From positions 27,156,001 through 27,220,000 of the forward strand of contig NW_027266269.1 of assembly GCF_022045235.1 (NCBI RefSeq): DNA of 64,000 bases, in the 5' to 3' direction. Both the position numbers and the translations under genes were made by a program. The notes under the pieces are model-generated. The model did no database searches, had not been told where the DNA came from, and was given only the letters and a program-made list of their open reading frames with translations. Within the stretch, counting starts at the first letter, position 1. The number at the start of each line of letters is the position of its first letter. This DNA is from Haliotis cracherodii. Lineage: Eukaryota. This document shows, in pieces, positions 1,241-38,000 of the stretch.

Positions 1241-3519
1241 TTGTAAATCTATTTGGTCACCTCTTACGACTGGCATAGGTTTCTGTGGACCAGTTCTGAC
1301 TCGGAATCCCTACAGCGTCGAGTGATCTGACAAAGTATATATTTTCGTGAGAAGCACAACGTATACCATGAGTAAACCTATCAACATGATAATGTCACGG
1401 AGTAAGACAAACACGTGTATCAGGAAGACTGGTATTGATGTGACAGCATAGAAATGTTTGCCAGAATGACTAAACCAAAAGCAATCTCTGCTTCAATTAA
1501 TTTATGAAACTTCTGTTCATCATAATCTTAAAACGTTGTCCGTGATACCTGTAATATTGCTACATACATGCATATGTACATTCGTCTGAAAATATTACAA
1601 GCTCCTCTTTTTGCAATTGGAAGACTATAAAACTGTTATGTTCACTTATAGAACCCTTGGCACGAGACTGAAAGCAGACCGGACTGAATGGATTACACTG
1701 TCACGAAAACGAAAAGCAACTTAAGTAAATACTTAGTGATTTATCACACAAAGGAGAAAAATACTATTTGCCATTTGTTGTTTTGTTTTTCAGTGGAGAA
1801 ATTAAACGAATTCATGACAGGATAAATCAAACCAAAGGCACACACGTGATTTCCACAATAGAACTAAATGTTTTCCAAGACGTTGCCAAGTTGAAGTGCA
1901 AGCTACCCGAGTAATGCGTTTCCGGGGGTCAGTAAGTCTTGATATACGAGCAAAGACGACCTCAGGTTATCAGCCAGCTCTATCTCCTGGAGCCTTGCTG
2001 CTCGTACACCAGGACATGGACAGGGATCACGTCTAGCCATCGATACATGCCATGGAGCCATATACACAGTTCGTCGACTGTTGCATCGTAAAGGACTGGA
2101 AAAGTAGAAAACTTCTGATTGGGAATAATAACTTTGCGAATGAAATCTACACAGTTTTGTCTACCGTATGAATGGAAAATTTGCGATTCATACGATTTTT
2201 TACTCGGCGACTGGTTGCAATATTCTTGACAATTATTAAATATTGTGACCTTTATTGAACGAGGGACAAGTGTTTATGTGTGCCTGAGACCGAGCATACT
2301 GTACGACATTGCCCAAAACTGATTTAATAATAAGTCTTCTATTTGTGATGCTGTCCTTGATATTCACCATTGACAGGGGACATTTTGTGGTAACAACGCA
2401 AGAACAAGAACGGTCTACATGTCGATACAGACAGTCCACAGAAACACACTCTATCTATTACAGTCAAAGAGTAACAGGAATCATCACATTGGTGACCCTG
2501 GAAGCATCTGTCCTGGAACTTCAATAACATATCATCCATCCATGACCTACATCCACACCATCAATCCATCAATTGACTTGAAACGTGACCCATATCTATA
2601 ATCGGTCAATTATCTACAGGCAAATTAGAGCCAAATTTGCCACCTTTCAGTTGACGTTAAGTGTTGAGATTCTCGTACAGGGGAACCGCTACCGCCTGAT
2701 TCCTATGACAAAGTGATGGATGGCCGGGGTCAAGAGTGTGTATGTCGCATTTCTAGTGCTGTACAACTAGAGCTACGGAAAGCAGCGAGACGCCTCATTA
2801 TATCAGTGGCCGGACACAAGGTGAGCAGGCCCATGTTGGTTGGATATACCATGGAGGCGGTGAAATTACAGACTATCTAACACTTGACAGTGCTGCCATG
2901 ATGGGAAACAGAAACCTTATGTCGTGTCACAAGATGTGACAGCCAACGTATCTGAGGTACCTATCGACTAGCAAGCAAATACATATAGTACTTTGTTTGA
3001 AGTCTCGCGGGAGTCGTTGTCTAGATGTTTGTCTGCCGTACCTGAGATATTAATGCCAAACGTAATATATACAAGACCAAATGAATAACTTTGTATTAAG
3101 ACTACCTCATGCTGATATATGGACACTGGATGCTTCTTAGACGTTGTTCAAACAGTTGTCTCATGGAGATAGCATTACCTAGAGGGACTGATGTAAATGA
3201 ACGCCAAATGACCGGTTGTCAGCTCAGGTTGTAAATCCTCAAGGACGAGAAAAGAGAATTATATTTGATTCGTGATCACCACTTAAAGCACTATTTCTGT
3301 ACTGCCCTGTCTGTTAGTTTCATAAGGTGTGATGGTACAGAGGGTTGTCGGTACTGAAGGACAAACAGAAATCGTCGGGTTAAATCTTGGATTTGACTTC
3401 AAAGCCTTAGAGTTTGTTTATTTGCTTGTTGTTTAACGTTGCACTCAGCTATATGACGGCGGTCAAGACCGTTAATCGTGTGAACAGGACGGAGTAACAC
3501 ATTTCCTCATAACATTTCC

Positions 3520-4235
3520 TATGTTTTCTTATGTGATGTCAGCCACATATGTGTCAATGGTTCCGATCAATTAGGATCATTACGCAGTGTTCATCAAATC
3601 AAGATGTATGTAAGCCTTCCAGCACTGTTTGCCGACTGAGATGTCAGCGTCTACCAAATCCTTTGCAATCAGCCCCAAGTGCCCAATTATTGCCGTTAAT
3701 GGTGATTTGAATGTGAGATCTGCGACAGTGTGCTAAGTGCCCACCCTTGAGCTATAGTGTAGAGGATTACATATGTCATCACACCCTGAGAGCCTGGTTA
3801 CTTGCAGATATGTTGCTGTAGTGGGTTGATCGTTCCTTACCGCCATTTGCATACCAATGTCGTGTCGCAGGAACAGACACACCGAATACTTCTAGCTTTT
3901 CTTATCTGATGTTAGCCACATATATGTCAATTGTTCCGATCAATTAGGGTCAGTATCCAGTGTTCCTTAAATCAAGATGTATGTAAGCCTTCTGGCACTG
4001 TTTGCAAGACTAAGATGTCTACGTCTACCAAATTTTGGGCAATCAGCCCCAAGTGCCCAATTATAGCTGTTAATGGTGATTTGAATGTGAAATCTGCGAC
4101 AGTGTGCCAAGTGCCCACCCTTGAGCTATAGTGTAGATGATTACATATGTCATCACAGCCTGAAGGCCTGGTTACTTGTAGATATGTTGCTGTAGTGGGC
4201 TCATCATGTCTTATGGCCACTTGCAGACACACCGA
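3520..4235 (+). repeat. Tandem duplication of a ~370-bp block (two copies)
   Basis: 3520-3885 and 3895-4235 align (e.g. caatcagccccaagtgcccaattat, gtgcccacccttgagctatagtgtag); unit E has a single inverted copy at ~36500-36880. Confidence 0.92.
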
Positions 4236-4534
4236 TGGCTATGGTACTTGGCTGACATTAAGCTAATCTGTAGATGTAAAGTTTTAATAACTTGGTAGCA
4301 TTTACTACACATATTGAACAGGCAAAGGAGAACCACTTCTATTTAAAGCATTTATATTGTATGTATATGCAAAGGTTTGTAAAATCTTACAGGCCGATTA
4401 CCCAGCTGACAGTCCAACACTGTGACAGTCAAAAACAACTTGTTACTTTGTTGTGGGGGTGGGGTTCACTACAAAATTGTGATGGGAAAACAGATTATTT
4501 CATGCATGCTTATCTCATGTATATGAATATGCAC

Positions 4535-4700: not shown

Positions 4701-5470
4701 ACCCCAAAGTGACCAACGATTTTATATGCTTTGTGTTGGTATGTCTCCATAAATTTTTACCATGACCCTCAAAGTGCTTACATTTTTATCTCTGTCAAAA
4801 GATCAGTGTGCTCTCGATTTTCATTCTCAGCTTCTAGGGGAGTATACCACGCATTTCCCAGCATGTCTGATGCATATTATGTGCAGACGACGTTCCATTT
4901 AGTTTGACACATACCACTTACTTGCTGATATTTAGTGCCAGAAAACTTAATTTACTGTTAATAGCGTCTCACTCTAATATGATTAGTGTGGCGAGCTCAG
5001 GCACCTACTGCTACAAGACTGACCTTGGGTAGCTTGCCAATATTTCACCTGCCACTGCAGACAGTACGTACTTAACTTTCATCATGGAGTAGAAGGAGTG
5101 AAGGCGTTCACTCGTCAAGAGGTTAATTCAACCTATGGCCCATATACGTGAATGTCAACATATCAAACGAGGACAATACACTCTACCCTTTGTTTTTTCC
5201 ATCCTATTTCCATACATATTATGAAATACCTTTGAACCCTTTTAAAAGTGATGTGTCATATAAGTCTCATATTTCATACAGAGGAATGGAAAGGAAGGGA
5301 TGCTGTGCTTTAACGTTAACTTTTGCCGAAATACAGAATTAATTACAGATTAGAAGACCAGTCAGTACTGAATGTCAACAGAAATATCCTCCAGTGTACT
5401 TCTCCAGAAAACAATGCACAAATCTTGTCCTGAAACTAAAACCAAGGTTTTGTTCAACACGTCCTATCCC

Positions 5471-6030
5471 ATCTTCCCGAGGCAAGGGCCTAAGCTGAAT
5501 ATATTAGTCCAGTTTCCACCCTTGCCGAACATGGCTGGAATTACTAGGCTCGAACGTAGCCCCACCAATGGCTATTTCAAGTGATGTTCCTTCTTTGTCC
5601 CTCCTATTGACCAAACATGATCAGATTCCTTCCCTCATATCACTTGAATTTGCTTAAAACTAAATAGAGGTGCATAGTCTAGACGATCTGATCGATAAAC
5701 AATATCGATTTTGTTATAAAACGGGTCTTACCCTGCGAATTGCATCAGATCACTTGAGCACCTTGATTAAAAACATGAAAAGATTTGCGAAATATCTGTC
5801 GATGCCCAGTTGACGGTACACATGCATTGTAAATCCATCAGTCGACCGAAATATGCTCGTGGACATCCATGTTGTTTTCGAACCGGATGTCTGGTTCGTT
5901 ACGCGATTTTGATGGGACTATGCACAGACTCGTCAGTCCACCCAAACTGTAACTCCGGAATTCCAGCAAAGTTTGGCAAAGGTGGAAACTGGACTTTTAT
6001 AGTTAGTTAAAGCCCTTGCCTCGGGAAGAT
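5471..6030. mobile_element. Non-autonomous DNA transposon (MITE-like) with terminal inverted repeats
   Basis: Perfect 19-bp TIR ATCTTCCCGAGGCAAGGGC / GCCCTTGCCTCGGGAAGAT plus a subterminal inverted repeat (~5508-5543 vs ~5958-5996); absent from the paralogous sites at ~13300-13325 and ~35232-35270. Confidence 0.85.
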
Positions 6031-6336
6031 TATCTTAGATGGACATTTTGTTCAATGCGTCTTACCCGTTTCCCTGTTGTTCCTGCTAATAAATTTCATT
6101 TGTGTGAATACTGACTGCCCGAAACAAACTTCATAACATACACTTAGTCCATTGAAGAAACATTCCGAGGGATATAGTTTGGTGTTTGTGTGAATTGAAT
6201 CCATTCTGAAATGCCAGGATTATCACTGTAAGGCGAAAATATTTCTCGATTTTGCTCAACTAATTCTATACTTGAAGATCCCGAGGCGCGTGAAGAAAGC
6301 ACCAGAAGAACAATGGATATCGGCAGAAGGCAAATA

Positions 6337-6416
6337 CCATGTGTGGAAGTCGAGAGCTTTTAACGTAACAATTGTTTCCTGCATCCCTCAGGCGTTGTGA
6401 ATGGAGGAAACCTCAG
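6337..6416 (+). other. Invariant 80-bp non-coding core, copy 1 of 4 (function unknown)
   Basis: CCATGTGTGGAAGTCGAGAGC...GAATGGAGGAAACCTCAG is identical at 6337-6416(+), 13573-13652(+), 23935-24014(-) and 33333-33412(-). Confidence 0.9.
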
Positions 6417-6926
6417 AGTAATTAACCAGTGAAGCATTTGACTTTTTCTCTGACGTCTAGTGTCTTTTTATGCTGAGATTTAATGCCACAGTGCACAGTG
6501 ACAGCGTGTGGAGGGGTTAGGTTGCTTCGCGTGATTATTATTGCATCTGTTAAATGGATATTGAAATCCTTTCGCGAACACTTGGTGTCATCACTGCTGC
6601 CACCTACACAAACACCTTATTATTAGTATCAAGATGGCTTGGACTACTTTTGTTTGTCATGATTCAGATCACAAACCCGACTTGTATATGTGGTTAATAT
6701 TTAATAACATTTCAAAACATGTGTGCGAAGTTCAAGCTTTGGTCTCTTGACACCAATTCACACCAAAAACCTCGTCTGCAACACAAGACTCCATTCCTCC
6801 ACCATTCAACTGAAACGCTTGGTATAACTAAGATACAGACCACGGGAGCTCGACGCAAAACCAACTCACTGACACAACAAATATTTGGAACCTGGTTTTC
6901 GATATCAACATGACAATATCATTCAA

Positions 6927-7200
6927 GGGGGCACGGGTGGTCCAGCCGTCTTAGGCTCCGCGATTCGCTTTGCCTCGTTGCGTCCCTTTGGCGCGCTGCA
7001 AACCTATGGTTGTGGGTTCGAATCCCGGTTCGCCCCGACTATGTTTCTAGGTTTGTCAGCACCATACCCGTGCTCGTTGGTTTCACCGAAGTGGTAAACT
7101 CTGAGACCTGCATGACTTCGGGCTTCCTCCCACATTAAGCTGACACGCAATGATATAACTAGAAGGCTGTTAAAAGCGGCGTTAAATCAAACTCACTCAC
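6927..7200 (+). mobile_element. SINE family 2 (tRNA-derived head, V-SINE-like body), full length
   Basis: A-box-like GGTGGTCCAGCCGTCTTAGGC, B box GGGTTCGAATCCC, body ...ggcttcctcccacattaagctgac..., tail gcggcgttaaa plus (ACTC)n; near-identical copies elsewhere in the window. Confidence 0.9.
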
Positions 7201-7239
7201 ACATGTAATGCAATTGTTATTTTTGCAATTGACTTCACG

Positions 7240-8200
7240 TCACTGCATTGTGTGATTGAGTATGACAGTTTCATGACGAGATAACAGCTGTTTCATATCT
7301 GCATTGTGTGAATGTAGCAAGGTAGTGCATAATCCAGGGACAAGGTGTACCCTTTACTATCCAATTCACTCGCTAGTTACAATCCTACGTCCGTTCTGTT
7401 TCTTGGTATTCCTGGTATTGTTTTACCAAAATAAACAAATGTGAAAGGCGCTACTGAGAATGCTTACATAGAATGGTTATGTTATGTGAGGCCTCATCAG
7501 TGAGAACAACGACGAACCCTACGGGTAGAGCAGACATACTTTGGGTTACAGCTGGTTGGGAACGAATGGATTTATTCCAGTTCTGTTTCCTCTCTTTCAG
7601 CTTGTGATTTCTACTATCGACAGCATCATGCATTTAATTCAACCCACTCTGAAACACATACAACACGTAAAATGTTCTCTGATCTGCTTCGACAGCATCC
7701 ATAATTATTTTAACGTTGTGATCACAATTGGGATGATGCTCCTCACGATAGTTTGGTCCATATTTAAAAAAACTGACGAAGTTTACTACCAGTTCATAAA
7801 TTAGTATCAATTCCCTTGTTTACAATTTTCAGATTGAGCTGATCTAATGAAGTCTGTTTCTCTTTTGGACAAACGTTTCAAAGCAACATCAAGAACTGTA
7901 CTCTCTTTTCGACACTGTGGGTTGTAACTGTTTATAGACCTATCCATTAGCGAATGTTACTTGTATCGTTTGATTTCTTTTGACCACCAAGAGTATAGTC
8001 TTGTTCCTTTTTGTGTAGTCCCAGTGCTTTCTCCCGGAGAAGGGGCCACGGGTGACCAAATCGTCTCCACAGCGAATCGCGTCATCCGTTGGGCACGCCA
8101 GAAACCTATCCTTATGGGTTCGAATCCCGGTTTCTCTCAGTTAATAAATTAGTATCAACCCCCTTGTTTACATTTTTTAGATTCAGGAACATTCCCTCTG
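7240..8200 (-). mobile_element. Degenerate Penelope-like retroelement ORF fragment (region N-terminal to the RT core)
   Basis: Minus-strand translations give LKIVNKGID and MHDAVDSRNHKLKE...PAVTQSMSALPVGFVVVLTDEASHNITILCK, resembling the PLE 'NKGID...KGPKYREP...YVLVPADKASNNIVFVCK' segment. Confidence 0.75.
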
Positions 8201-8964
8201 TTTCTGATTTAATGAAGGGTACATTACTTTACATTTCATGTGGCAGCCTACGCAAACCTAACTTTTATAGATGTCTAAATATAAACAAATATCCAATGAT
8301 TGTGGATTTGAATCTCAGCTGACATTTCACATGGTTTATGATGCGCTTATGGCTTTCAGCATGGCATTTGTAAATGAACTGCCCCACTTTATCAGTTCGT
8401 CTGACACACTGTGATACATAGAATACTAAACGAGCTTCCGTGTAATACAAATTTTATGAAACGAGTGAATAGTTTGTTATCTGACGAGCAAAGGCGTGTC
8501 AGATATCAGAACTATGCAAGAGGCAGTCATGATTTAAGCTAAATTGATAGCTCAATTTCAGTTATGCATAAACCTTCAGTGACAATATCTGTTGTGTTGA
8601 TTTTTCCTTTGGTATTTCTTTTTAACCTTCGTATGACCTTTCCGATCAGATGACTTTCAGAGCCTTGTGGCTCTATTATTTCCAATTTTGTTCTGCAGTG
8701 AGCCGCCTAATTTCAATAATAATGTCACAGTAACACTGTCCTCTTCAATACTATGCAGTAGTTCATTAGTCAGGACAAAGTCTTTCATTAGTCTTTCAGA
8801 GATATTTTCCTCGTAAAACACATGTTTTTTAACAAAAGCAGACACCATTACAGCATTGCTTTAAAATTCAGTATGAGAGCTATTTATATATTAATTGATT
8901 ATTTTCTCTTGTTAAAGTTTTGATTATAGTAATGTGGGTTTCATACATTGGAAAACGATGTACA

Positions 8965-10230
8965 ACATGCGTCTCACTGGGGAGTCCCCCAGTGTTAACC
9001 TGACACGGCATGATATTACTCAAATGCGGAATACACACGCATTACAAATCAGAGTATTGCGAATATTATTGTCCTCAGCCTTTTCTGACTTGGTAAAAAC
9101 ATGGCCCTTAGTTATGTAATGCTCCTTCACAATGTTTGTTTGTTCCAAACTGAAGCTGACACGCCCTGATAATCCAAATAATCGACTTATTGAGCTGGTG
9201 ATATTTTATTCAACATCTTCCTATGGATGACGTATAGTGTATATATACAACCGACCAACAAAAAGGAAACTGATAAAATGATAGTGAAAGGTGTGATGTC
9301 GATAGATATCTGATAAAGGTTTGGGCTCATATATCAATATCTGGGGTGTCCACCATGTTGGTCGATACTTGCACGACATCTTGATGGCATACTGTTGAAT
9401 AGCATGACTGTGTTTGGTTGTCCTTGGTATTGCACGCCATTCCACCCGAAGAGCTGCCCCAAACTGGACCAAACTGTCGTGTGTTGGGTCAAATTGCAAT
9501 CCCTTTGTAAATATCAGTCAGTTATTTCCACATCAACATGTATCACTATGACATCATGACGAATAAGGTTATATGATGTTTAGCATAATTATTAGATTAA
9601 TATATAATCCTTTTATTCTATATTAACATGTTCGCAATCGATCCTGAAACTCTGATTTACATGAAACCCAGCAATGCTGCCATATATATTCGGCATTTTG
9701 GGACCATAACTGAATGTGTTGTGTTTTAGTGCTTCTATATTTCATCATGAACATGCCGTGAAGATATCAGATTTGTGGATATCTCCTTTGGTGTTCCTTC
9801 TGTCTCGTCATATGATCTTTCCGATGCCTCACAAAGCCTCATGGCTCTTTTATGTTCAAATTTGTTCTGCAATGAACCACTTAATTAAAATTTTAATTAC
9901 ACTGTAACACTGCCTTCAGATCAACGACTTGCGTCACTTTGTGGAGTCCTCCAGTCTTAACCCTGACACGGAATGATACTCAAATACTGAATTCTCACTC
10001 ACTCACTGATGACATATCAGAGTAATGCGATCATTATTGTCCTTAATGTTTTCTGACTTCCTGACTATACGGTCTTCATTTGTCAAATGCTGCTTCACAA
10101 AGTGTTGTTGCTCCCACATGAAGCTGACACGTCCTGGAATGACTGAAGTCCAAATCATTTGATGGCTAGAACTTATTGTGCTAAAGATATTCTTAGTCAA
10201 TATCATCCTTAGGATGACGCATTCTATATA
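8965..10230 (+). repeat. Direct repeat of ~280 bp (8965-9240 and 9925-10230) bracketing a Tc1 remnant
   Basis: Shared strings such as gcgtc(t)cact..ggagtcc, tattactcaaat, attattgtcct, tgaagctgacacg and ggatgacg. Confidence 0.8.
9325..9500 (-). mobile_element. Tc1 transposase C-terminal remnant
   Basis: Minus strand reads AALRVEWRAIP, then after a frameshift NSMPSRCRASIDQHGGHPRY-stop, the typical Tc1 end 'L.EEW..IP...SM.RRC..VI...GGHT.Y'. Confidence 0.75.
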
Positions 10231-10834: not shown

Positions 10835-11108
10835 GACCCGTGAAGAAACGGGGTAGAATAGGTCTTCAGCAACCAATGCTTGCTGTTAAAGGCGACTATG
10901 TTTGTCGTAAAGGGCGACTAACGAGATCGGGTGGTCAGGCTCGCTGACTTGGTTGAAGAATGTCATCGATCCCAATTGCGTGGATCGATGCTCATGATAT
11001 CAATCCCTGGATTCTCTGGTACAGACTCGATTATTTTCAGACCGCCGCCATATAGCTGGAATATTGCTGAGTTCGGCGTAAAAACAAACAAACAAACAAA
11101 CAAACAAA
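10835..11108 (+). mobile_element. SINE-like family 4 (no recognisable tRNA head), full length
   Basis: Starts GACCCGTGAAGA and ends in (CAAA)n; 12-bp TSD CACTACGCTGAG at 10823-10834 and 11109-11120; empty site in the mirror copy at ~22875-22895. Confidence 0.92.
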
Positions 11109-13572
11109 CACTACGCTGAGTCTTGAGTTCACTTGACCTGTGTAGTGACAATGGATACTTTGATCCATGTACATATATCCTTCTGTTGAACTTCACTTAT
11201 ACAATGTATGCCATATGAACAGGAACACGTTGTGTCTACCTCAATGATCACCAGATTAATGAGCTGGATTACCTGCGATACAATTATTCAATAAGGGTTG
11301 AGAATGTATATTCCACCTCGGGTTGATCAAGTTCCTCATTTACTAGCTAAGCATATAACACCAGACTAGTGGATGATTTACATGGAAACGGGTTTCCAAA
11401 GAATCTCGATCCTAAGTATTTAACACCTTGGAACACGAGAGGCCCAGTCATCAGAGTTGCGTCCCTTGAGAAAGGAAACCTATAATTGGGGGTTTGAATT
11501 TCTTTTCGCCCCAATTATGTTTCATGGTTGTTCACCACCATACCATGATCATGGGTTTCACTAAAGTGGTAAACGTCTGAAACCTGCACCACCTTGGGCT
11601 TTCCTGCATTAAACTGCCACACTGTGACATAACTGGGATGCTGTTTAAAGCGGTATTCACTCAAGATCACTTACTTAAAATCCATATCATGCTCATGGTT
11701 TACTCCGAAGCATTGACTGCAACGAGACATCTTTCCTCCAGCATCCAAGTCAAACGGAGACATATACGTGAAACACAGAGCAAAGTGGTTGTCAACGTCA
11801 TCATTGCCTGAACATGATGGTTCTCTGGCAAGGTCAGCGACTTGTGTTATGTTTGCCCTAAAAGACCAACCATTTGTTTGAAATGAATGTCTTAGGCTCA
11901 GCCGTTAAGGAAAACCTATGTATGGATAGTTTGTAGGTGCTAAAACCATCTTCACATACTGGGAACCTACATTTCGTCAAAAGGGCTTTTTACAGAACAC
12001 ACGAACGTCGTTCCAACTCGATCTAAGGATTACCAGGCAGGTATACTCACGACAGTTCTTTATTAATGACAGTGAGGGACTCTTTGCCTCGAGACGACGT
12101 GGTAAGATGTACCATTCTCCATGAATTGCACCGACCTGACAATATAAGCTAAAAATACACTGTCTATACTGAGAGGCTAAACGTTCAAGCGTTTAAGTCT
12201 ATTCTTATGCGGTTGATAATTGTAATGTAGTTCTCAAAAACTTTCCTGAATTTTGTGAGACTAGAGTCAATAATGGAATAATAAAAAGTGGAATAATTTG
12301 CTTGTAAATGCTAGCGATCACATTGAGTTCGTTGAGTATGATATTTCTGCGGTAGATGTTTCATTGCAGTACTGCTTGTGGGGACCCAGGTGGCGCTGCA
12401 GCTGCTGAGTAGAAATGCGTCCTACATCTGAAGTCACATTCTTTCGACAATTATGTGCCCGGGGAGTTAAGCAACGATTCCATCTTCGTTTCTACATGTT
12501 CTTTTTATTTGGATTTTATTTTGTGTTATCAATTTACTCTTAGAGTTCTACTACGTGACTATCTGTCACTTCCATTAAGATATAAACTCAGATGCAAAAG
12601 AAAGTACATCAATTTTATTATTTTTAAATTGAAGGAAATGTTGTCACATTTAATTATGTCTGTTTAGCCATCTTTCATTCCAACAACGAATCTCTCAAAC
12701 AAGAAGACGATCCACATTGATGACACCTCTTTGATGTAAAAGGTTCGGTCACAATCACACTTACTAAATCTGGAAGCAGCTGTCATGGAGCTTCATGAAC
12801 CTTTTACCTTTTAATAGCATTTCTCGACAGATACGAAATATTATCCTCTCTGTTTATTATGTATTAATGTACAAGACACATTTGTTGACAGTATTCTTTC
12901 TTTAATGCTGATGATGCATACTATATTTGAAGTCACTTTTGATTTTGTATATACATATATATTCACAAGTAAAGAGAAAACTACTTTTGATCAACGAAAT
13001 TCGAAACCAATGTCAGCAGATGCAAGAAAGACAATTCTCACAGCACGTGATCCGTGAGGGCTAGCAATATAATCCTTGAAGACAGGTGCCGAAGACAATG
13101 CATGATTGTCAAAATGGGAAAAGACAGGTCATGATGATATCGAGGACCCTTCAGATTACCCTACACAGTGATCAAGGGACGTTTACAATTGAATGAAACA
13201 CATATTCATACCATTACCGAACTGCACGTGCACTATTAGTTTGCTCTTCAAATAGCAGGCATGTACGATGTACAATACTAGTCCCGAAGACTAGAACCAA
13301 GGTTTTTACAATACATCTTACCCATTTACTGTTCTTGTCTGAATACCTCCTCATAACCTCTTTGATTCCCAAACATATTGTGCCATACTTTTATTCCATT
13401 TGACAGCAAAGATAGTTTTGTGTTTTTTTGGTGAAGATGAATTTATTCTGAAATGTCAGGATTATCACTGAAGCTATTACTCGACTTTGCAAATATTAAG
13501 TCTATATTCGAAGCTCCCGAGGCACGTGAAGAATGCACCAGAAGAACAATGGATATCAGCAGAAGGCAAATA

Positions 13573-13652
13573 CCATGTGTGGAAGTCGAGAGCTTTTAAC
13601 GTAACAATTGTTTCCTGCATCCCTCAGGCGTTGTGAATGGAGGAAACCTCAG
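13573..13652 (+). other. Invariant 80-bp core, copy 2
   Basis: Identical to 6337-6416. Confidence 0.9.
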
Positions 13653-14396
13653 AGTAATTAACCAGTGAAGCATTTGTCTTTTTATGCTGAGATTGAATGC
13701 CACAGTGCACAAAGACAGCTTGTGGAGCGGATTAGGTTGCTCCTCGTGAAGGGCAATTTGCGAATTGCCATCGCATTTGTTGAATGGATATTGAATCGCG
13801 GCGGCTGCTACCGGTAAGGCAGGTAATGCTTATATTTTTCGCGAACACCTGGTGTCATCGCTGATTTCAACATTTCATTTTCGCCTCTCTCTTGCTTTTT
13901 ACGCCAATTGGAATGATTGTTTCGTCAGGTAGTCGAGATTGATGATTCACTGGCGTTGACATTTCATATTTATATCATGGACTGTTCTGGGTGAACAATA
14001 CCTTCCAGATGGCGTGCTGGTTTTCTTGGGGGAATTAGTCAGCGAAGAGCCGGAGCCACATGCGACTAATCACAATTTTATTTACAAGAACAATTAACAA
14101 TATCTTAGAGAATAGCTGAGGGTGCCACAGAGAGTCGGTACAACCCTCTGGGTTGTGGGAGAGAGGTCTGCTTGGTAAGAGAGTCAAACCCCTTCTCTGC
14201 CCTATCATGTTGCTACAGTATGTATTTAATAAAAATTTGAACAATAAAAAGGAATGTGATTGGTTGATACACGATTGGTTGTGCCCTATGCTAATTGAAT
14301 GGCTAGACAGAGGGGAATACTTAATCCTGTTAATCCTGTTGGACTGGCACTAATCTTGTTGACATATTTACTGGATGCTTTGAAAGAGATTATGGT

Positions 14397-22252: not shown

Positions 22253-22511
22253 TCCCGTGAAAATCCAGGGTAGAAAAGGTCTTCAGCAACCCATGCTTGC
22301 CGTAAAAGGCGACTGTGCTTGTCGTAAGAGGCGACTAACGGGATCGGGTGGTCTGGCCTGCTAACGTGGTTGATGTATGTCATCGATCCCAACTGCGTGG
22401 ATCGATACTCATGATGTCAATCACTGGATTGTCTGGTCCAGGCTCGATTATTTACAGACCACCGTCATATAACTCGAATATTGCTGAGTGCAGCGTTAAA
22501 CAACAAACAAA
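22253..22511 (+). mobile_element. SINE-like family 4 copy
   Basis: cccgtgaa...gtcgtaagaggcgactaacggg...gcgttaaacaacaaac; imperfect TSD aacccccaatc/aacctcaaatc; empty site at ~11480-11500. Confidence 0.9.
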
Positions 22512-23487
22512 CCTCAAATCATAGGTTTCCTGCATTCTTAAGGGACGCAACTCTGATGACTGGGCATCTCGTGTTCCCTGGTGTTTAAATACTTAGGACC
22601 GAGTGTCTTTGAAAAGCCGTATCCATGTAAAACATCCACTAGTCTGGTGTTATATGCTTAGCTAGTAAATCAGGTCAACCCGAGATGGAATATACATTCT
22701 CAACACTTATTGGATAATTGTATTGCAGGTAATCCAGCTCATTAATTTGGTGATAGGTAGGTAGGTAGAACGTGTTTCTGTTTCTATGACATACATTGTA
22801 TAAGTGAAGTTCTAGAGAAGGATATATGTACACGGATCAAATTACCCACTGTCACTACACATGTCAAGTGAACTCAAGACTCAGCGTAGTGAATTGGTTA
22901 ATGAATTTGCCTGTTATACCCGAAATTGATCGCCAAATGAACCATTTACACCGAGCTACAATCAGCGTACGGAAACACGGAACTAACCTGGTCACACAAT
23001 GGAACTGATCACGTCCCTTTAGTCGGTAACGAAATGTACTGACGACAGTCTTTTGGGTATTAATAGCAACCTTTAGCGGCAAGTGGTCATGCTGTAAGTA
23101 GTGATATGTCATGTCAGCCTGTAAAGTATGATAAATCATATATACGCAATGTACTTTAAACATGTAATCAAGCGACAGGATATCCTATTGTGTGTCTTGT
23201 TACGTTGTATCAAATGTCTGTCCTGTTCCCTCAAGTCTGAACTAGATAGCAACAACCAGACCTTATTACCTTCACAGTCCATCTCTCATAGAAGACCGAG
23301 CGGCGCACGATTTACGCGTCTCGGGTGAAGAATACTCGAAACGAAACGAACGGTTGACATAATTATTCAATATTTGAGTTGATAGTTTCCAGTTGCTAAG
23401 CTATTCCTTACGTTTGTCTGAACAGTGGTGGGGATCTTTTGTTCTTCAAGATAAAAACAAACTACCCTGACAAACTCAAATATTCGA

Positions 23488-23658: not shown

Positions 23659-23934
23659 CTCAAATATTCGAAGCCATCTCGATACGTATTATATGGTGTT
23701 TGCAATCTCTCACACCAAGTGTTTGTGAAAGGATAAGAATTACCTGCCCTACAGGATGCACCACTACCATTCAACATCCATTCAACAGAAGCGATAATTA
23801 TTCACAAATTGCAAATCACGCGAAGCAACCTAACCCGCTCCACACACTGTCATTGTGCACTGTGGCATTCAATCTCAGCATAAAAAGACACTAGATGTCA
23901 GAGAAAAAGTCAAATGCTTCACTGGTTAATTACG

Positions 23935-24014
23935 CTGAGGTTTCCTCCATTCACAACGCCTGAGGGATGCAGGAAACAATTGTTACGTTAAAAGCTCTCG
24001 ACTTCCACACATGG
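23935..24014 (-). other. Invariant 80-bp core, copy 3
   Basis: Reverse complement is identical to 6337-6416. Confidence 0.9.
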
Positions 24015-24482
24015 TATTTGCTTTCTGTCGATATCTATTGTTCTTCTGGTGCTTTCTTCACGCGCCTCGGGAGCTTCGAGTATAGAATTAATATTTGCAA
24101 AGTCTCTATCTTATAGTTATATTCCTGAACTTTCAGAATGGATTCAATTTCACAAAAACACAAACTATATCCCTCGGAATGTTTCTTATATGTCTCAAAT
24201 AGACTAAGTGTAAGGTACATTATGTTATCAAGCAAAATCATCCCCAAAAAGGCCAAGCATTAGGGAAGGGTCAGCATTGTCTTTAGAGACTTTAGAGCAT
24301 CAAAAACCTCTGACAGAACACCAACATCCTTACACACCTACACACACACTAACACACATAATATCAAATCGTTGGTCACTTTGGGATTTAAAGTGATTGG
24401 CTTGGAGTCAAGACACTGTGTCTCCTTGGGGTATTCTTGATAAACTGTTGCATGGTGTCTCAATGCACCAGCACTTTAAAAC

Positions 24483-27658: not shown

Positions 27659-27947
27659 GACCCGTGAAGATTCCAGAGTAGAATAGGTCTTCAGCAACCC
27701 ATGCCGCACCCAGCAATATTTCAGCTATATGACGGCGGTCTGTAAATTCTCGAGTCTGGACCAGACAATCCAGTGATGAACATCATGAGCATCGATCCAC
27801 TCAATTGGGATACGATGGCAAACATCAACCAAGTCAGCGAGCCTGACCACCCGATCCCGTTAGTCGCCTCTTACGACAAGCATAGTCGGCTTTTACGGCA
27901 AGCATTGGTTGCTGAAGACCTATTCTACCCCGGATCTTCACGGGTCG
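27659..27947. mobile_element. Family 4 fold-back: forward 5' head fused to an inverted near-full copy
   Basis: GACCCGTGAAGA...CAACCCATG (+, ~27659-27703) followed by the reverse complement of the element ending TCTTCACGGGTC (~27704-27947). Confidence 0.88.
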
Positions 27948-32471: not shown

Positions 32472-33332
32472 AAACATAGCCATAAGTATTACTCAGTAGC
32501 GCCTGTTAGATTTTATTTAATTTTGGTAAAACAAAACCAGGAATACCAAGAACAGGGCGGACGTAGCATTTTGTGCCTGCATTTTACACTGCCTTGCTAC
32601 ATTCACGACAATGCAGATATGAAAAAGTTGTTATCTCGTCATTAAACTACTATGCGCAATCACACGATGCAATGCTAGTCTAAGCCATCTCGATATTATA
32701 TGGTGTTTGCACATTTCCTATATACATGTCATCTGACTGTCTGGTGTGGTCTATAATACATGAAATTACCTTGCCCGTATCATTCAAACATGCAGTTACG
32801 TTCTTGTGTGTCTTGTTACTGTAACTAAATGTCTGTCAAGCGTCCGCAGCTCTAATCATACGGTAACAGATTATAAGCAGCCAACTCCTGACCTTCACAA
32901 TGCACCACTTGCACAATGACGAGCGACCAAGCAGGAATTACGCATCATGTGTCCCGGTCGTGTGGAAGCACAGAACATTTGGCGAGCAGCAATAATCAGA
33001 AATTCCATACATAAAGTACATGTAGGTTCATCCATAGCTCCTCCTCACAATGAAGTATATACACCAGCATGTAAATCAATGATTCGTTTAAGCTGGATGA
33101 GAAGATGTTTATAAGACATCAGTGGAAATGTAAGCATTACCTGCCCTACCGGAAGCATCCGCCACGATTTAATATCCATTCATAAGATGCGATGGCAATT
33201 TGCAAATTGCCTATCATGAGGGGCAACCCAACCCGCTCCACACGCTGTCATTGTGCACTGTGGCATTCAATCTCGGCATAAAAAGATGCTAGATGTCAGA
33301 GAAAAAGTCAAATGCTTCACTGGTTAGTTACT

Positions 33333-33412
33333 CTGAGGTTTCCTCCATTCACAACGCCTGAGGGATGCAGGAAACAATTGTTACGTTAAAAGCTCTCGAC
33401 TTCCACACATGG
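33333..33412 (-). other. Invariant 80-bp core, copy 4
   Basis: Reverse complement is identical to 6337-6416. Confidence 0.9.
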
Positions 33413-33488
33413 CATTTGCCTTCTGCCAATATCCATTTTTCTGGTGCTTTCTTCACGCGCCTCGGGAGCTTTGAGTATAGAATTAAAA

Positions 33489-35009
33489 AACTGACGTCCA
33501 AAAGAAACTTTACTAACTGAAAATATAAATTTCAGACAAAGTATAAATGTTTTTTCGATGAAGTCTATCTAAAACACATAACCTTAACACAACAATAGTG
33601 TATGCAGAATATGTTAATCGTCTGTTACATGTTTGCGAGATAACACGCGAAAAAGTGAAAAACACGTGCACCACGGACAACTGCAAATGCACGTGGGGGT
33701 AAGGGTATAAAACTATTGCAACGGCAAGTCAGACATCAACAGTGATATATAAACAAAAAGGAAATGCCACGACTCAGTCGAACAACGTGAACGAGCCTTT
33801 GGTATGGAACAGATGGGAGCCACCCACGCCCATATTGCACGAACCTTCGGTTGCTTCCGTTTTGCCGTTACCAACTTGATGCAACGTTACAGACAGACAG
33901 GGCGGACCGCTGACAGGCCAAGAACAGGCAGACCGAGGGTGACCACGCCCCATGATGACCAGTACTTGCGTACCTTGCACCTCCTAAATCGCTTCCTGAC
34001 AGTGACGTCATCGGCGACAAATGCCTTAGGCCACAGGGTTAGTCGACAAACAGTGGCCAGGAGACTCAGGGCTAAAGGAATCCGGGCTTTTAGACCATAC
34101 AGAGGACAGCTATTGACAGCGCAACATCGTCGTCTGCGATTGAGATGGGCCCGGAATGTACGACGTTGGCAACGACGTGACTGGCAGAGGGTTTTCTTCA
34201 CTGACGAAAGTCGATTCTGTATGTTTAGGGCTGATGGAAGACAACGTGTTTACTGCCGAAGGGTTGGAACGAACGGCGGCGTGTTGCGTGTAGGAGGTCG
34301 TACCATATGGTGGAGGGAGTCATGGTGTGGGGAGGGATCTGTGGGCAGGAGAGGACACCGCTGGTCATCGTTGACGGAAATTTGACTGCTCAGCGTTACA
34401 TGGATAACATTCTTCGTCCAGTTGTCCTACCATTTCTCCAACAGCAGCCACGTGGTGTCATTTATCAGCATGACAACGCTAGAGCCCATACAGCCAGAAT
34501 TGTCACTAACATAACCAACAACGTCAAAGCCCTGCCGTGGCCTGCACGCTCACCCAACATGTCCCCCATAGAACACCTCTGGGACTTCATGAATCGTCGT
34601 GTTCGACAACGACCACACTCTCCAGCCAACCGGCAAGAACTGAACTTGTCCCCCTAAAAAGAATGGTGTCCTCATCAGACGACTGACTTTTTCTGTGCGT
34701 CGAAGAGTTTTTTGCGTGTATTGAGGCATTTGGTGGTCACACACGCTACTAATGACTTGTTTTTGAACGTGAGCGATTGTTTATGTACTCTGCCTAATGT
34801 CAATGATTCTGAAAGCTCGTGTTTTGTGCCACACCCAACTTTGGGGTGCTCTGACGTCATTCTCGGTCGCGGTATGATTGTCATTTTCAGTGTTGATTAT
34901 GTTGATATATCGATCTTCCCAATACACTTTACTTCATGCATGTATGTTTTTTTTGTCTTTGAGCAAGAGTGATTTCAAAATCTGGTAAAGTTTCTTTTGG
35001 ACGTCAGTT
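33489..35009 (+). mobile_element. Full-length Tc1-family DNA transposon (~1.5 kb)
   Basis: TIR AACTGACGTCCAAAAGAAACTTTA / TAAAGTTTCTTTTGGACGTCAGTT; TA on the right flank (left reads AA); empty site gaattaaTAtttg at ~24085-24097. Confidence 0.95.
33764..34752 (+). pseudogene. Tc1 DDE transposase, frameshifted
   Basis: MPRLS start, HTH and RPRTGRPRVTT, catalytic motifs FTDESRF, HDNARAH and WPARSPNMSPIEHLW, and a C-terminal GGHTRY-stop; split across ORFs 33804..34385 and 34307..34657 by several frameshifts. Confidence 0.93.
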
Positions 35010-38000
35010 TATTTGAAAATTTGGGTAATAGCTTCTACCTAAACAGTGATAATCCTGGCATTTCAGAATAGATTCAATTTCACACCAACACAAAACTATA
35101 TCGCTCGGAATGTTTTTTCAATGTCTCAATTGGACATAGTACAGTATATGACACAATATGTTATGAAGCAAAGTTTGATTGGGGCATTATTCACACAAAT
35201 GAAATTTATCAACAGGAACAACAGGGAAACGGGTAAGATGTATTGAGCAAAACCTTGGTTTTAGTTTTCAGGACTAGGTTTGGGCAACATTTTCTGGAGG
35301 AGTACACTGGAGGAATTTTCTGTTTACTTTCAGTACCGACTGATCTGTATCTGTATTCTCGTCGCAACATGGCTGAAATAATCTGATGCGAGGTTAAACT
35401 TTAACTCACTCACTCACTGTATCAGGCAAACGAGAAGATAATAGCACAGCATCTCATCATTTCCAGTAAGAGACTTAAATTGACACGTCGTTTTTAAAAG
35501 GGACCAAATGTATTTCATAAATATATGGAAATAGGATGAAAAGAAATGGTAGAGTGTATTGTCCTCGTTTGATATTTTGACATTTACGTATATGGGCTAG
35601 TGGGTGAATTAAACATTTGCCTTGACAAGCGAACGCTTTCACTGCTTCTCCTCTATGATCAAAGTTAAGTACGTACTGTCTGCAGAGGCAGATGAAATGT
35701 TACTCCAGGTCAGTCTTGTAGCAGTAGGTGCCTGAGCCTGTCACAGTAATCATATCAGAGTGAGACGCTATAAACAGTCAATTCAGTTTTCTGGCACTAA
35801 ATATCAGCAAGTAAGTGTTATATGTCAAACTAAATGGAACGTCGTCTGAACACAATGTGCATCAGATACTTTGGCAAATGATTGATATACTCCCCAAGAA
35901 GCTGAGAATGAAAATCGAGAGCAAACTGATCTACTGACACAATAATAATGCGCTTGGAGGGTCATGGTAAAAATCTATGGGGACGTTGGGAGTGTCATAC
36001 AAAATATGCCAAGCATCAAGGGAGGGCAAGGTTTTTCTGTAGATTGGAGCATCAAAAACCTCTGATAGAACCCCCAAACCCCACACCCAACCCCAACCCC
36101 ACTCCCAACCCCAACCCCTTACACATACGCTACCACACACTAACAAACTAACACTCACAGCATGTCATATCGCAGTTCACTTTGGAATAAAACAAGGTAA
36201 GGATGATTGGCATGGAGTCAATATACTGTGTCTCAGTGGGGTATTTTATGAAGCTGCGACACGGTGTCTCAATGTGCCAGCACTATGAAACTGGCAACGG
36301 ACCAGACAAGCACAAGCAGCCACACTCGCACACTCACACGTGCATGCTATTACGTTTGTGCATATTTCGTTCACATAAGATAAATATGCATGAATAAGCT
36401 GTTGCCCCTTTTACAACCTTGTAGTGAAACCCATCTCCACAACAGAGTTACAAGTTCTTTGGAACCCTTTACATGTACAGATTAGTTATGTCGGCGGAAT
36501 ACCATAGCCGTCGGTGTGTCTGTTCCTGTGACACGACATTGGTATGCAAGTGGCCATAAGGAACGATCAACCCACTACAGCAACATATCTACAAGTAACT
36601 AGGCCTTCAGGGTGTGATGACATATGTAATCATCTACACTATAGCTCAAGGGTGGGCACTTAGCACACTGTCGCAGATCTCACATTCAAATCACCATTAA
36701 CGGCTATAATTGGGCACTTGGGGCTGATTGCCCAAGATTTTGTAGACGTAGACATCTTAGTCTTGCAAACAGTGCTTGAAGGCTTACATACATCTTGATT
36801 TAAGGAACACTGGATACTGACCCTAATCGATCGGAACAATTGACATATATGTGGCTAACATCATATAAGAAAAGCTAGAAGTATTTTTTTGGGATATATA
36901 GTACGCCGTCCTATTCCAACTATCTAAAGTCAAATCCAAGTTTTAACCCGACGATTTTTGTGTGTCCTTCAGTACCAACAACCCTCTGTCATTAAAACCT
37001 GTTTTGATGTACCATCACGCTTAATAAAACTAACAGACAGGGCAGTACAGCAATAGTGCTTAAAGTGGGGATCACGAATCAAATACAATTCAGTTTTCTC
37101 GTCCTTGAGGATTTATAGCCTGATCTGACAACCTGTCATTTGGCGTTCATTTACATCAGCACCTCTAGGTAATGCTATCTCCAGAAGACAACATGCACTG
37201 TTTGAACAAGGTCACTTGTCTATGAAGCATCCAGTGCCCATATATCAGCATGAGGCAATCTTGATACAAAGCTATTCATATGGTCATGGATTTATTACCA
37301 TTGGCATTAACATCTCAGGTACGGAAGACAAACATGTTGACAACGAGACTTCCAACACAGTACAATGTATTTGCTCGCTGGTCGATAGGTACCTCAGGTA
37401 CATAGGCTGTCCAATCCTGTGACACGACACGAGGTTCCTGGCAGCACTGTCAAGTGTCAAATAGTCTGTAATTTCAACGCCTGCATGATATATACAACCT
37501 ACATGGGCCTGCTCACCTTGTGTTCGGTCACTAATATAATGAGGCGTCTCGCTGCTTTCCGTAGCTCTAGTTGTACAGCACTAGAAATGCGACATACACA
37601 CTCTTGACCCCAGCCATCTATCACTCTGTCATAGGAATCAGGCGGTAGCAGTTCCCCTGTACGAGGATCTCAACACTTAACGTCAACTGAAAGGTGGCAA
37701 ATTTGGTTCTAATTTGCCTGGAGATTATTGACCGATTATAGGTTTGGGGCATGTTTCAAGTCAATTGATTGATGGTGTGGATGTAGGTGATGCATGGGAT
37801 GATAAGTTCCAGGACCGGTGCTTCCAGGGTCACCAATGGGATGCTTCCCGTTACTCTTTTACCGTAGAATGTGTAACTTTGAGATAGAGTATGTTTAAGC
37901 AGACAAGCTGTATCGACATATTGATTTTCCGCTAAAAGTATGAGCTAATATATTCATTATGACAAGAGTGTTGCATTTGGTATCGGTTTGCACGTCTATC

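What the first reader, a model, noticed from the sequence alone, without database searches (positions are those of the whole stretch)
6337..6416. An 80-bp block identical in all four diverged units: candidate functional core of the array
Seen: zero differences over 80 bp among 6337-6416, 13573-13652, 23935-24014(rc) and 33333-33412(rc), while sequence 100-200 bp away carries frequent substitutions and indels. It is the only region I found retained in all four units. It contains a palindrome AACAATTGTT (two overlapping SOX-type AACAAT half-sites), GGAAGT (ETS-type) and a ~38-nt hairpin GTTTCCT...AGGAAAC. No reading frame is preserved across copies (stop in C, indel in E, 22-bp deletion in B nearby). 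Inference: purifying selection on a promoter/enhancer, a structured RNA or a small-RNA trigger site.
Basis: partly seen in the sequence, partly recalled or inferred. Interest (0 to 1): 0.85.

Follow-up and report, generated by a model that had tools for sequence, protein, structure and literature searches.

The report
Invariant 80-bp noncoding core, abalone repeats
Four old, roughly 15-20% diverged copies of a non-coding DNA unit in the black abalone genome share one 80-base stretch without a single difference, most likely because it is a selected control element next to a TATA-type promoter, but what it does could not be tested here.

Summary
The 80 bp at 6337-6416 recur exactly at 13573-13652 and, reverse-complemented, at 23935-24014 and 33333-33412. 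The next-longest four-way invariant run is 18 bp, and the longest three-way run in about 3,800 other aligned columns is 30 bp. From the substitution rate of its own flanks (23 changes in 151 columns) about 12 changes were expected (P about 5e-6).

It is not a dispersed repeat. The genome (black abalone, 1.18 Gb) holds only these four copies plus one older partial copy 7 kb to the left. It is not a coding exon, since all six frames have stops. It matches no Rfam family and folds no better than shuffled sequence.

All 23 flanking differences are private to one copy, so nothing points to gene conversion, though I cannot exclude it.

On the strand opposite to the one given for A and B, the block lies 47 bp downstream of an invariant CATAAAAAG motif and an initiator-like site. 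My best reading (about 0.37) is a selected promoter-proximal leader element of a short, probably non-coding transcript.

Interest is modest.

The parts
6337..6416 (-). Invariant 80-bp block, copy A (read on - strand in the proposed orientation; about +24..+103 from the putative start site at 6439)
   Evidence: Identical to the other three copies. It is the longest invariant run in the four-way alignment.
13573..13652 (-). Invariant 80-bp block, copy B
23935..24014 (+). Invariant 80-bp block, copy C
33333..33412 (+). Invariant 80-bp block, copy E
6259..6514 (-). Conserved core of copy A (257 alignment columns, 81% invariant across four copies): upstream conserved stretch, TATA-like motif, block, and the 3' flank that ends at a GTATAG donor-like site
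13495..13729 (-). Conserved core of copy B. It lacks 22 bp between the TATA-like motif and the initiator-like site (junction 13677/13676, matching A 6462-6441). The deletion lies between two near-repeats, TG(A/T)CTTTTT on the + strand. The donor-like GT is changed to AT.
23836..24092 (+). Conserved core of copy C
33234..33486 (+). Conserved core of copy E, cut off at its 3' edge by a Tc1/mariner insertion
6464..6472 (-). TATA-like motif CATAAAAAG, invariant in all four copies. It lies about 32 bp upstream of the initiator-like TCAAAT around 6439.
   Evidence: Read directly from the sequence and alignment. No transcript data.
6360..6437 (-). 25-codon ORF (MLHWLITLRF...), intact in A, B and C, with I>V in E. 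Its first 17 codons are recognisable in the older copy F. Its ATG lies only about 3 nt from the putative start site.
6270..6271 (-). Donor-like GT (GTATAG) where four-way conservation drops. An acceptor-like TTTCAG follows about 66 bp downstream (around 6207-6212), within a 9-bp invariant run.
   Evidence: Inference only.
33487..35012 (.). Tc1/mariner-type insertion in copy E, with 29-bp terminal inverted repeats at 33485-33513 and 34985-35013. It explains why E seems to lose homology right after the core; homology resumes at about 35010-35043.

Best explanation
The block is a non-coding element under strong purifying selection. It belongs to a roughly 250-bp promoter-plus-leader module carried once by each of four diverged units (A, B, C, E) of a local inverted segmental duplication about 45 kb long.

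The module reads on the - strand in A and B and on the + strand in C and E. In that orientation it contains, in order:
- about 45-110 bp of conserved upstream sequence;
- an invariant TATA-like CATAAAAAG;
- a 22-bp spacer of free sequence;
- an initiator-like TCAAAT;
- the block, at about +24 to +103;
- a less conserved stretch of about 65 bp that ends at a GTATAG donor-like site.

I propose that RNA polymerase II starts at this promoter. The invariant 80 nt would act either as the 5' leader of a short, probably non-coding or micro-ORF transcript, or as a dense promoter-proximal protein-binding platform.

Shown: the identity, its improbability, the low copy number, the absence of coding capacity, the absence of a stable fold, and the motif geometry. 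Inferred: transcription, its direction, and selection rather than conversion.
For: - The four copies are identical over 80 bp. The next invariant run is 18 bp, and 0 of 20,000 shuffles reach 80. Three-way runs elsewhere are at most 30 bp.
- All 23 substitutions in the 151 flanking core columns are private to single copies (A 5, B 7, C 5, E 6). Some lie 1 bp outside each edge of the block. The four lineages therefore diverged independently on both sides while the block stayed fixed. Expected changes are about 12, P about 5e-6.
- The genome has only these four copies plus one older partial copy. The unit DNA is otherwise unique to this locus.
- The TATA-like motif is invariant, and the spacing to the initiator-like site is 32 bp in A, C and E.
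- Conservation falls at the donor-like GTATAG, and a transposon sits just beyond it in E without harming the core.
- The older copy F keeps exactly the region from about -125 to +75. Its best-kept part is the first 50 nt after the putative start: 21 of 22 and 12 of 12 identical in two stretches.
- In B, the 22-bp deletion would move a TATA-set start to about the 5' edge of the block, so the block would still be transcribed.
Against: - No transcript, CAGE or chromatin data could be obtained, so the promoter and the strand rest on motifs only.
- CATAAAAAG plus an initiator-like site can arise by chance in AT-rich DNA.
- Copy B has lost the spacer, the donor-like GT and the whole downstream body, yet keeps the block. 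This fits a self-contained module but weakens the idea of a longer spliced transcript.
- The flanks of the block evolve at nearly the background rate (about 4% per lineage against 3-10%). The 'promoter' itself is therefore not strongly constrained apart from a few motifs.
- Pairwise-only identical runs of 86-106 bp elsewhere in the array show that some homogenisation happens at this locus.
- CpG observed/expected in the core (0.57-0.79) does not differ from the window (0.73).
Confidence: 0.37

Rival explanations
1. The block is an orientation-independent DNA element: an enhancer, silencer or insulator-like cluster of overlapping protein-binding sites. Selection acts on the double-stranded sequence, and no transcript of its own is needed.
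For: Eighty contiguous invariant bases with no stable RNA fold and no usable reading frame fit tightly packed binding sites. Candidate sites include the palindrome AACAATTGTT, a near-palindromic TTACGTTAA, TAATTA just upstream, and GGAAGT. The element is kept in copy B, which lacks the downstream body and the TATA-to-start spacing. It works equally well in both orientations of the palindromic array.
Against: No gene with a recognisable domain was found in the window, in 30 kb of the left flank or in 10 kb of the right flank, so no target gene is evident. The motif assignments were not tested. The block's fixed position just after a conserved TATA-like motif would then be coincidence.
Confidence: 0.2
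2. There is no function. The identity is a product of concerted evolution, meaning repeated short gene-conversion events among the four copies or a local conversion hot spot.
For: Pairwise-only exact runs exist elsewhere in the array: 106 bp between A and E at 2120-2015, 92 bp between the upstream regions of A and C at about 12127, and 86 bp between C and E at 25228. In parts of the body A and E are near-identical while C differs by 15-20%. Some exchange between copies therefore occurs. Copy B looks damaged yet keeps the block.
Against: At least three separate events would all have to cover the same 80 bp while extending no more than 5-36 bp beyond it. The pairwise runs are 80, 85, 85, 87, 87 and 116 bp. 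Not one of the 23 flanking variable sites is shared by two copies, whereas conversion tracts normally leave shared variants. No other multi-copy run exceeds 30 bp. Two of the copies are inverted relative to the other two and lie 10-27 kb apart.
Confidence: 0.2
3. The block is the body of a small non-coding RNA read on the + strand in A and B. This could be a short polymerase III-type or snRNA-like transcript ending at the T5 runs just downstream (6443-6447, 6465-6469), or a precursor of small RNAs.
For: Two T5 runs follow the block on the + strand. B's 22-bp deletion lies between two near-repeats TG(A/T)CTTTTT and leaves exactly one T5 run at the same distance from the block, so such an RNA would be almost unchanged in B. 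An AT-rich stretch lies about 150 bp upstream on that strand.
Against: A T4 run (GCTTTTAAC) lies inside the invariant block and would tend to stop polymerase III. No Rfam family matched at E up to 10. Fold energy equals that of shuffles. There is no miRNA-like hairpin and there are no C/D or H/ACA boxes. No other genomic site shares sequence with the block that could be a small-RNA target.
Confidence: 0.1
4. The block is part of a protein-coding first exon. Either it is the 5' UTR plus start codon of a secreted protein whose signal peptide follows (MVFAFCRYPLFFWCFLHA...), or it encodes the 25-residue micropeptide MLHWLITLRFPPFTTPEGCRKQLLR.
For: The block's last four bases on this strand are ATGG, opening a hydrophobic 23-24-codon ORF that ends at a donor-like GT. 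E's 3-bp deletion keeps the frame and C has two synonymous changes. In the 25-codon ORF the few changes seen in five copies are three synonymous and two conservative.
Against: The hydrophobic ORF has a stop at codon 7 in B and at its last codon in E. Its changes are 2 synonymous against 7 replacement changes plus 2 stops. No downstream coding exon was found, because every longer frame in the body is broken in the paralogues. Pfam gave no hit. No predicted protein in 5.8 billion clusters matched either of the two island ORFs queried, one on each strand. The micropeptide ATG would lie about 3 nt from the putative cap. Coding cannot explain zero synonymous change or the 23 invariant bases after its stop.
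Confidence: 0.08

Closest known systems
Duplicated conserved non-coding elements and ultraconserved elements (known mainly from vertebrate paralogous gene regions; from my own knowledge)
   Same: A short non-coding stretch stays identical between paralogous copies whose surrounding DNA has diverged. It has no reading frame and no stable RNA fold.
   Different: Here the copies are four units of one local, lineage-specific inverted duplication in a mollusc. No developmental gene is nearby and nothing is yet known about conservation between species. Vertebrate elements are defined by cross-species conservation, which I could not test.
Conserved sequence element in the promoters of clustered protocadherin variable exons (from my own knowledge)
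   Same: Each repeated unit of a cluster carries its own promoter with one short, near-invariant element, while the rest of the unit diverges.
   Different: That element is about 20 bp, lies upstream of the start site and serves coding exons spliced to shared constant exons on one strand. Here the block is 80 bp, probably downstream of the start, the units lie in both orientations, and no coding exon was found.
Conserved 5' UTR and signal-peptide exons of fast-evolving mollusc secreted protein families (conotoxins, abalone lysin and the 18-kDa sperm protein; from my own knowledge)
   Same: The 5' end of the gene is far more conserved than what follows. The block ends in an ATG that opens a hydrophobic ORF and then a donor-like site.
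   Different: The ORF is broken in two of the four copies, no downstream coding exon exists, and no protein in the databases searched resembles it. Membership is not supported.
Hairpin-RNA (endo-siRNA) loci built from inverted duplications, as in Drosophila (from my own knowledge)
   Same: The duplication is inverted. The 80-bp blocks of opposite arms would form a perfect duplex if both lay on one transcript.
   Different: The arms are only about 80% identical overall. The putative promoters of the inner copies B and C point away from each other, so one transcript would not carry both arms. No other place in the genome matches the block as a possible target.

Membership tests
Curated structured RNA families (Rfam 15: snRNA, snoRNA, miRNA, SL RNA, 7SK, U7 and others) | Covariance-model match at or near the family's gathering score | tested here: not met
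   There was no match at the island at gathering thresholds. At E up to 10 the only match was one chance hit (manA-II, 14.9 bits against 100) outside the block.
Structured RNA in general | Fold more stable than shuffled sequence, or compensatory changes | tested here: not met
   z-scores are +0.08 and -0.23 for the block, and +0.6 to +0.7 for 118-220 nt on both strands. Covariation cannot be tested because the block never varies.
Protein-coding exon | Open frame through the element in all copies, with a coding pattern of substitution | tested here: not met
   All six frames of the 80 bp contain a stop (sequence; ORF lists). Flanking ORFs show 2 synonymous against 7 replacement changes plus 2 stops, or 4 against 8. 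There was no Pfam hit and no database protein.
Dispersed repeat or transposable element | Many copies at unrelated loci, with terminal repeats or target-site duplications at the ends of homology | tested here: not met
   BLAST found 4 copies. A sequence profile over the whole 1.18-Gb genome found 4 plus 1 partial copy, all within 41 kb on one scaffold. A weak 12-18-nt inverted repeat flanks the island in A and C, but homology between the units runs on past it.
TATA/initiator RNA polymerase II core promoter with transcribed leader | TATA-type motif about 25-32 bp upstream of an initiator-like start site, conserved in the copies | tested here: met
   CATAAAAAG is invariant in all four copies. 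TCAAAT lies 32 bp downstream in A, C and E, and the spacer varies in sequence but not in length. B lacks the 22-bp spacer. This is sequence evidence only.
TATA/initiator RNA polymerase II core promoter with transcribed leader | Transcripts that start there | not testable with these tools
Gene-conversion tract (concerted evolution) | Variants shared between copies and mosaic relationships at the tract borders; identity within a species but differences between species | tested here: inconclusive
   None of the 23 variable sites in the core is shared by two copies, which argues against conversion. Pairwise-only identical runs do exist elsewhere in the array. The cross-species test could not be run.
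Hairpin-RNA / small-RNA source with a target elsewhere | Near-perfect inverted arms on one transcript, and a matching target locus | tested here: not met
   The arms are 76-84% identical. No further genomic match to the core was found (the best other hit had E 0.28). Small-RNA reads were not available.
Spliced-leader RNA gene | High-copy tandem gene with an invariant short leader exon directly followed by a donor site and an Sm site | tested here: not met
   There are only 4-5 copies. The stretch upstream of the only donor-like GAG|GT (the block's 5' edge) varies in C and E, while the would-be intron is the invariant part. There was no Rfam SL match.

The most novel reading that the evidence does not exclude
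The four modules are an abalone-specific family of very small, self-contained transcription units. Their about 80-nt unstructured RNA segment, or the 25-residue peptide that overlaps it, is held under near-absolute nucleotide constraint. That would make a new lineage-restricted regulatory RNA or micropeptide gene, amplified locally and in both orientations. Copy B, reduced to little more than the module, would show how small the functional unit is.
Probability: 0.2. Interest if true: 0.55.

Novelty: new member of a known kind. Interest (0 to 1): 0.35.

Why it matters
If the block is selected, it marks a functional non-coding element in a gene-poor stretch of a critically endangered mollusc's genome. 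Almost no regulatory DNA or non-coding RNA has been characterised in such animals. Its four natural 'replicates', each with a different flank, plus a truncated copy and an older decayed copy, already delimit the functional unit to roughly 100-250 bp. That makes it an easy target for reporter, transcript-mapping or population-genetic tests. If it instead turns out to be a conversion hot spot, it would be a tidy example of very short-tract concerted evolution among inverted and direct repeats. Either way it is a local curiosity and does not bear on a long-standing question.

Tried and rejected

**Searches for relatives elsewhere**
- An exact 31-mer from the block had no match in metagenome or viral contigs.
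- The + frame ORF 6194-6397 and the - frame ORF 13480-13620 had no relative among 5.8 billion protein clusters.
- No eukaryotic genome other than the window's own was reachable.

**Coding capacity of the units**
- Pfam scans covered all 260 stop-to-stop frames of 60 aa or more in the window and 83 frames of 75 aa or more in 40 kb of flanks (30 kb of the left flank, 10 kb of the right). They found only transposon domains (Tc3-type HTH, DDE_3, RT, RNase H) and a few weak hits to unrelated families that I take as chance (Strumpellin, DUF2430, MgtE_N; E 0.0002-0.003).
- The best-looking body ORF (3975-4238, minus strand, with third-position-biased differences) hit only weak, repeat-like, probably spurious proteins in 1.84 billion representatives. 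It is broken in its paralogues. ORF 1906-2160 is also broken in its paralogues.

**Readings rejected on sequence**
- Iron-responsive-element-like CAGTGA loop: the flanking bases do not pair.
- Telomerase-template-like CCTAACCC upstream of the TATA-like motif: it is not conserved in B or E and lies outside the putative transcript.
- U7-like Sm site near the T runs: no Rfam U7 match.
- MITE reading from the weak flanking inverted repeat: homology runs through it.
- CpG observed/expected as a promoter mark: no difference from background.
- Exon boundaries for the other conserved patches in the body: no consistent AG/GT signals on either strand.

Full report
**1. The observation**

The 80 bases at 6337-6416 recur without any difference at 13573-13652 and, reverse-complemented, at 23935-24014 and 33333-33412. 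The palindrome AACAATTGTT occurs only at these four places in the window, against 0.21 expected.

I aligned the four copies with about 500 bp of flank, after removing a transposon from copy E.
- The 80-column invariant run is followed in rank by runs of 18, 16 and 11 columns.
- No column shuffle out of 20,000 reached 80, either inside the 463-column shared island (maximum 35) or inside the best-conserved 257 columns (maximum 53).
- In about 3,840 ungapped three-way columns from the other shared parts of the units, the longest invariant run is 30 bp.
- Within the 257-column core but outside the block, 23 substitutions fall in 151 ungapped columns. At that local rate about 12 substitutions were expected in the block, giving Poisson P(0) of about 5e-6. 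At the rate seen just downstream of the core (3-10% per lineage), about 19 were expected.

**2. Genome and locus**

The window is scaffold C6:27,156,001-27,220,000 of a 1,182,234,246-bp assembly. The published black abalone (Haliotis cracherodii) primary assembly is 1,182,252,637 bp and its mitochondrial genome is 18,391 bp (PMC9709981). The difference between the two assembly sizes is exactly 18,391 bp, so this is that assembly without the mitochondrion. Earlier notes of this scan also call the genome black abalone. It is a HiFi assembly, and the copies differ by 15-25%, so they are not haplotype or collapse artefacts.

Self-comparison shows four units. I orient each so that the island reads the same way, which is the minus strand for A and B and the plus strand for C and E.
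- A consists of upstream part X, upstream part Y, the island, and a body running from 6046 to 1 and on to about 2 kb left of the window.
- B consists of X, Y and the island, and has lost its body.
- C consists of X, the island and a body (24115-26756).
- E consists of Y, the island and a body (35043 to about 42619).

A and E form the outer arms and B and C the inner arms of an imperfect palindrome of about 45 kb. Pairwise identity over aligned columns is 76-84% including gaps.

The shared segment is about 450-520 bp, with a 257-bp core: A 6514-6259, B 13729-13495, C 23836-24092, E 33234-33486.

The unit DNA is unique to this locus. Whole-genome searches with 6 kb pieces found only the sister units plus inserted high-copy repeats. 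The 305-bp island has exactly four matches.

A sequence profile of the core found one more relative, F, at C6:27,148,949-27,149,073, about 7 kb left of the window on the plus strand, with E 7e-11. F aligns from about 125 bp upstream of the putative start site to about 30 bases into the block and then stops. Weak remnants of part X lie 1.3-2.2 kb upstream of F, so F is an older, decayed unit.

**3. What the block is not**

- *Not a dispersed repeat*.
- *Not a coding exon.* All six frames of the 80 bp contain stops.
  - The longer frames in the unit bodies are broken in one or more paralogues, and their mismatches are spread evenly over codon positions.
  - Pfam finds only transposon domains and a few weak, probably chance, hits in the window and in 40 kb of flanks.
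  - Two ORFs crossing the island have no relatives among predicted proteins.
  - One body ORF with a third-position bias hit only weak, repeat-like sequences.
- *Not a known or thermodynamically evident structured RNA.*
  - Rfam gave nothing at the island, either at gathering scores or at E up to 10.
  - Minimum free energies of 80-220-nt pieces on both strands equal those of dinucleotide shuffles, with z from -0.23 to +0.69.
  - The GTTTCCT...AGGAAAC hairpin therefore exists on paper but is unremarkable.

**4. Selection or conversion?**

Evidence against conversion:
- Every one of the 23 variable sites in the core flanks is private to a single copy (A 5, B 7, C 5, E 6).
- Such private changes lie one base outside the 5' edge (in C) and one base outside the 3' edge (in E) of the block.
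- The six pairwise exact runs that overlap the block are 80, 85, 85, 87, 87 and 116 bp.
- To produce this by conversion, at least three events would have to cover the same 80 bp, none spreading more than 5-36 bp further, and none leaving a shared variant.
- Constraint explains the common borders directly.

Evidence that keeps conversion open:
- A and E share a 106-bp exact run at 2120-2015 where C differs by about 20%.
- Similar pairwise-only runs of 86-92 bp exist elsewhere.
- Copy B looks damaged yet keeps the block.

I put conversion without function at about 0.2. The test that would settle it, comparison with other Haliotis species, was out of reach.

**5. Anatomy and proposed mechanism**

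The core reads as follows on the minus strand of copy A:
- conserved upstream sequence, including an imperfect palindrome GGCAATT(C/T)GCAAATTGCC that is partly deleted in A;
- CATAAAAAG at 6472-6464, invariant in all four copies; from my own knowledge this resembles the beta-globin form of the TATA box;
- a 22-bp spacer that varies in sequence in A, C and E and is deleted in B;
- GTCAAATGC, with an initiator-like A at about 6439, which is 32 bp from the TATA-like motif;
- an 18-bp invariant run;
- the block, at about +24 to +103; its last bases on this strand are ATGG;
- about 65 bp carrying 17 of the 23 private changes and a 3-bp deletion in E;
- GTATAG at 6271, after which four-way conservation drops from 14-18 to 6-7 invariant columns per 20.

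About 66 bp further on, an invariant TTTCAG follows (around 6207-6212). About 80 bp beyond that, each copy has a GTA(T/A)-type donor-like site.

In E a 1.5-kb Tc1/mariner element with 29-bp terminal repeats sits a few bases after the GTATAG. In A a MITE lies at 5470-6030.

This layout fits a TATA-driven polymerase II promoter, a first exon of about 170 nt whose middle is the block, and a short first intron. None of it is shown by transcript data.

Two points favour a small, self-contained module over a long gene.
- B has lost the body, the spacer and the donor-like GT (now AT), yet its core has diverged no faster than the others.
- The old copy F retains only about -125 to +75. Its best-kept stretches lie just after the putative start: 21 of 22 and 12 of 12 identical.

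In B, a start set 30-32 bp after the TATA-like motif would fall at the block's 5' edge, so the block would still be transcribed.

What the 80 nt do remains inferred. An unstructured leader that binds protein or another RNA, or a packed promoter-proximal DNA platform, both fit.

Short ORFs do not explain the block.
- A 25-codon ORF (6437-6363) is intact in all four copies. Over five copies it shows three synonymous and two conservative changes.
- However, its ATG would lie about 3 nt from the cap.
- It cannot explain the lack of synonymous change or the 23 invariant bases after its stop codon.
- The hydrophobic ORF that starts at the block's end is broken in B and E.

**6. The plus-strand alternative**

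On the plus strand two T5 runs follow the block. B's deletion lies between the near-repeats TGACTTTTT and TGTCTTTTT and leaves exactly one of them, so a plus-strand RNA ending at a T run would survive in B. Against this reading, a T4 run sits inside the invariant block, no Rfam family matches, and the sequence shows no special fold. I give it about 0.1.

**7. Comparison with known systems and verdict**

The nearest known kind is a conserved non-coding element retained in paralogous copies. The nearest known layout is a repeated promoter with a short invariant element, as in clustered protocadherin promoters. Conserved 5' exons of fast-evolving mollusc secreted proteins, hairpin-RNA loci and spliced-leader genes were each considered, and each fails at least one defining feature (see Membership tests).

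I class the finding as a new member of a known kind: a lineage-specific conserved non-coding element tied to a putative promoter.

The statistical case that something holds these 80 bases fixed is strong. The functional case rests on motif geometry alone. Interest is 0.35.

Noticed in passing
L007:2949-3073 (G000:C6:27148949-27149073, about 7 kb left of the window): A fifth, older and partial copy of the island (F) on the plus strand. It aligns from about 125 bp upstream of the putative start to 30 bases into the block (E 7e-11 to 4e-16) and then loses homology. Weak remnants of the units' upstream part X lie 1.3-2.2 kb before it.
   Followed up: partly
window 1-42619 plus about 2 kb left of the window (L007 about 7950-10000): The four units form an imperfect palindrome of about 45 kb. 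Arms A and E stay homologous past the window's left edge: left-flank coordinates -2046..-1334 match 42619-41916, and -409..0 match 41842-41412.
   Followed up: partly
window 2015-2120 vs 38638-38743; about 12036-12127 vs 21609-21700; 25228-25313 vs 36965-37050: Exact runs of 86-106 bp are shared by only two units, while the third unit differs by 15-20% there. This is patchy pairwise homogenisation, probably gene conversion between repeat copies.
   Followed up: partly
window 2617-2812 / 25771-25936 / 37525-37720: A patch of about 190 bp is conserved at about 92% in all three units that have a body. It has no open frame and no consistent splice signals on either strand. Its meaning is unknown.
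   Followed up: partly
window 33487-35012: A Tc1/mariner-type transposon with 29-bp terminal inverted repeats, inserted just after the core of copy E. ORF fragments in the window's first half, most likely from this element, hit the Tc3-type HTH and DDE_3 Pfam domains.
   Followed up: partly
window 5470-6030: A 560-bp element with terminal inverted repeats of about 72 bp (MITE-like), inserted only in unit A. More than 40 copies at 80-83% identity lie across many scaffolds.
   Followed up: partly
window 10835-11100, 22254-22512, 27703-27946, 44807-45093, 62180-62453; also 6927-7203, 31342-31641, 32187-32478, 51139-51414, 61043-61326: Two families of short dispersed repeats of about 270 bp (SINE-like), each present many times in the window and flanks. 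The first family also has many copies genome-wide at about 90% identity.
   Followed up: no
window 53165-53556, 43821-44169, 58661-59016, 59630-59964: A repeat family of about 350 bp. The copy at 53173-53244 scores as tRNA in Rfam (32.5 bits) but ARAGORN does not call it, so it is probably a tRNA-derived SINE head.
   Followed up: no
window 57170-58157; 56348-56827; 41125-41430: Three tandem arrays: a 43-bp unit with 23 copies, a 234-bp unit with 2.1 copies, and a 108-bp unit with 2.8 copies.
   Followed up: no
window 3524-3854 and 3897-4228: An internal tandem duplication of about 330 bp within the body of unit A. One copy carries an 88-codon open frame whose differences from unit E are biased to third positions (4, 2, 10). 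The frame is broken in the sister copies and has no credible protein relatives.
   Followed up: yes
whole genome G000: The assembly size equals the published black abalone primary assembly minus exactly the 18,391-bp mitochondrial genome. This identifies the source species.
   Followed up: yes
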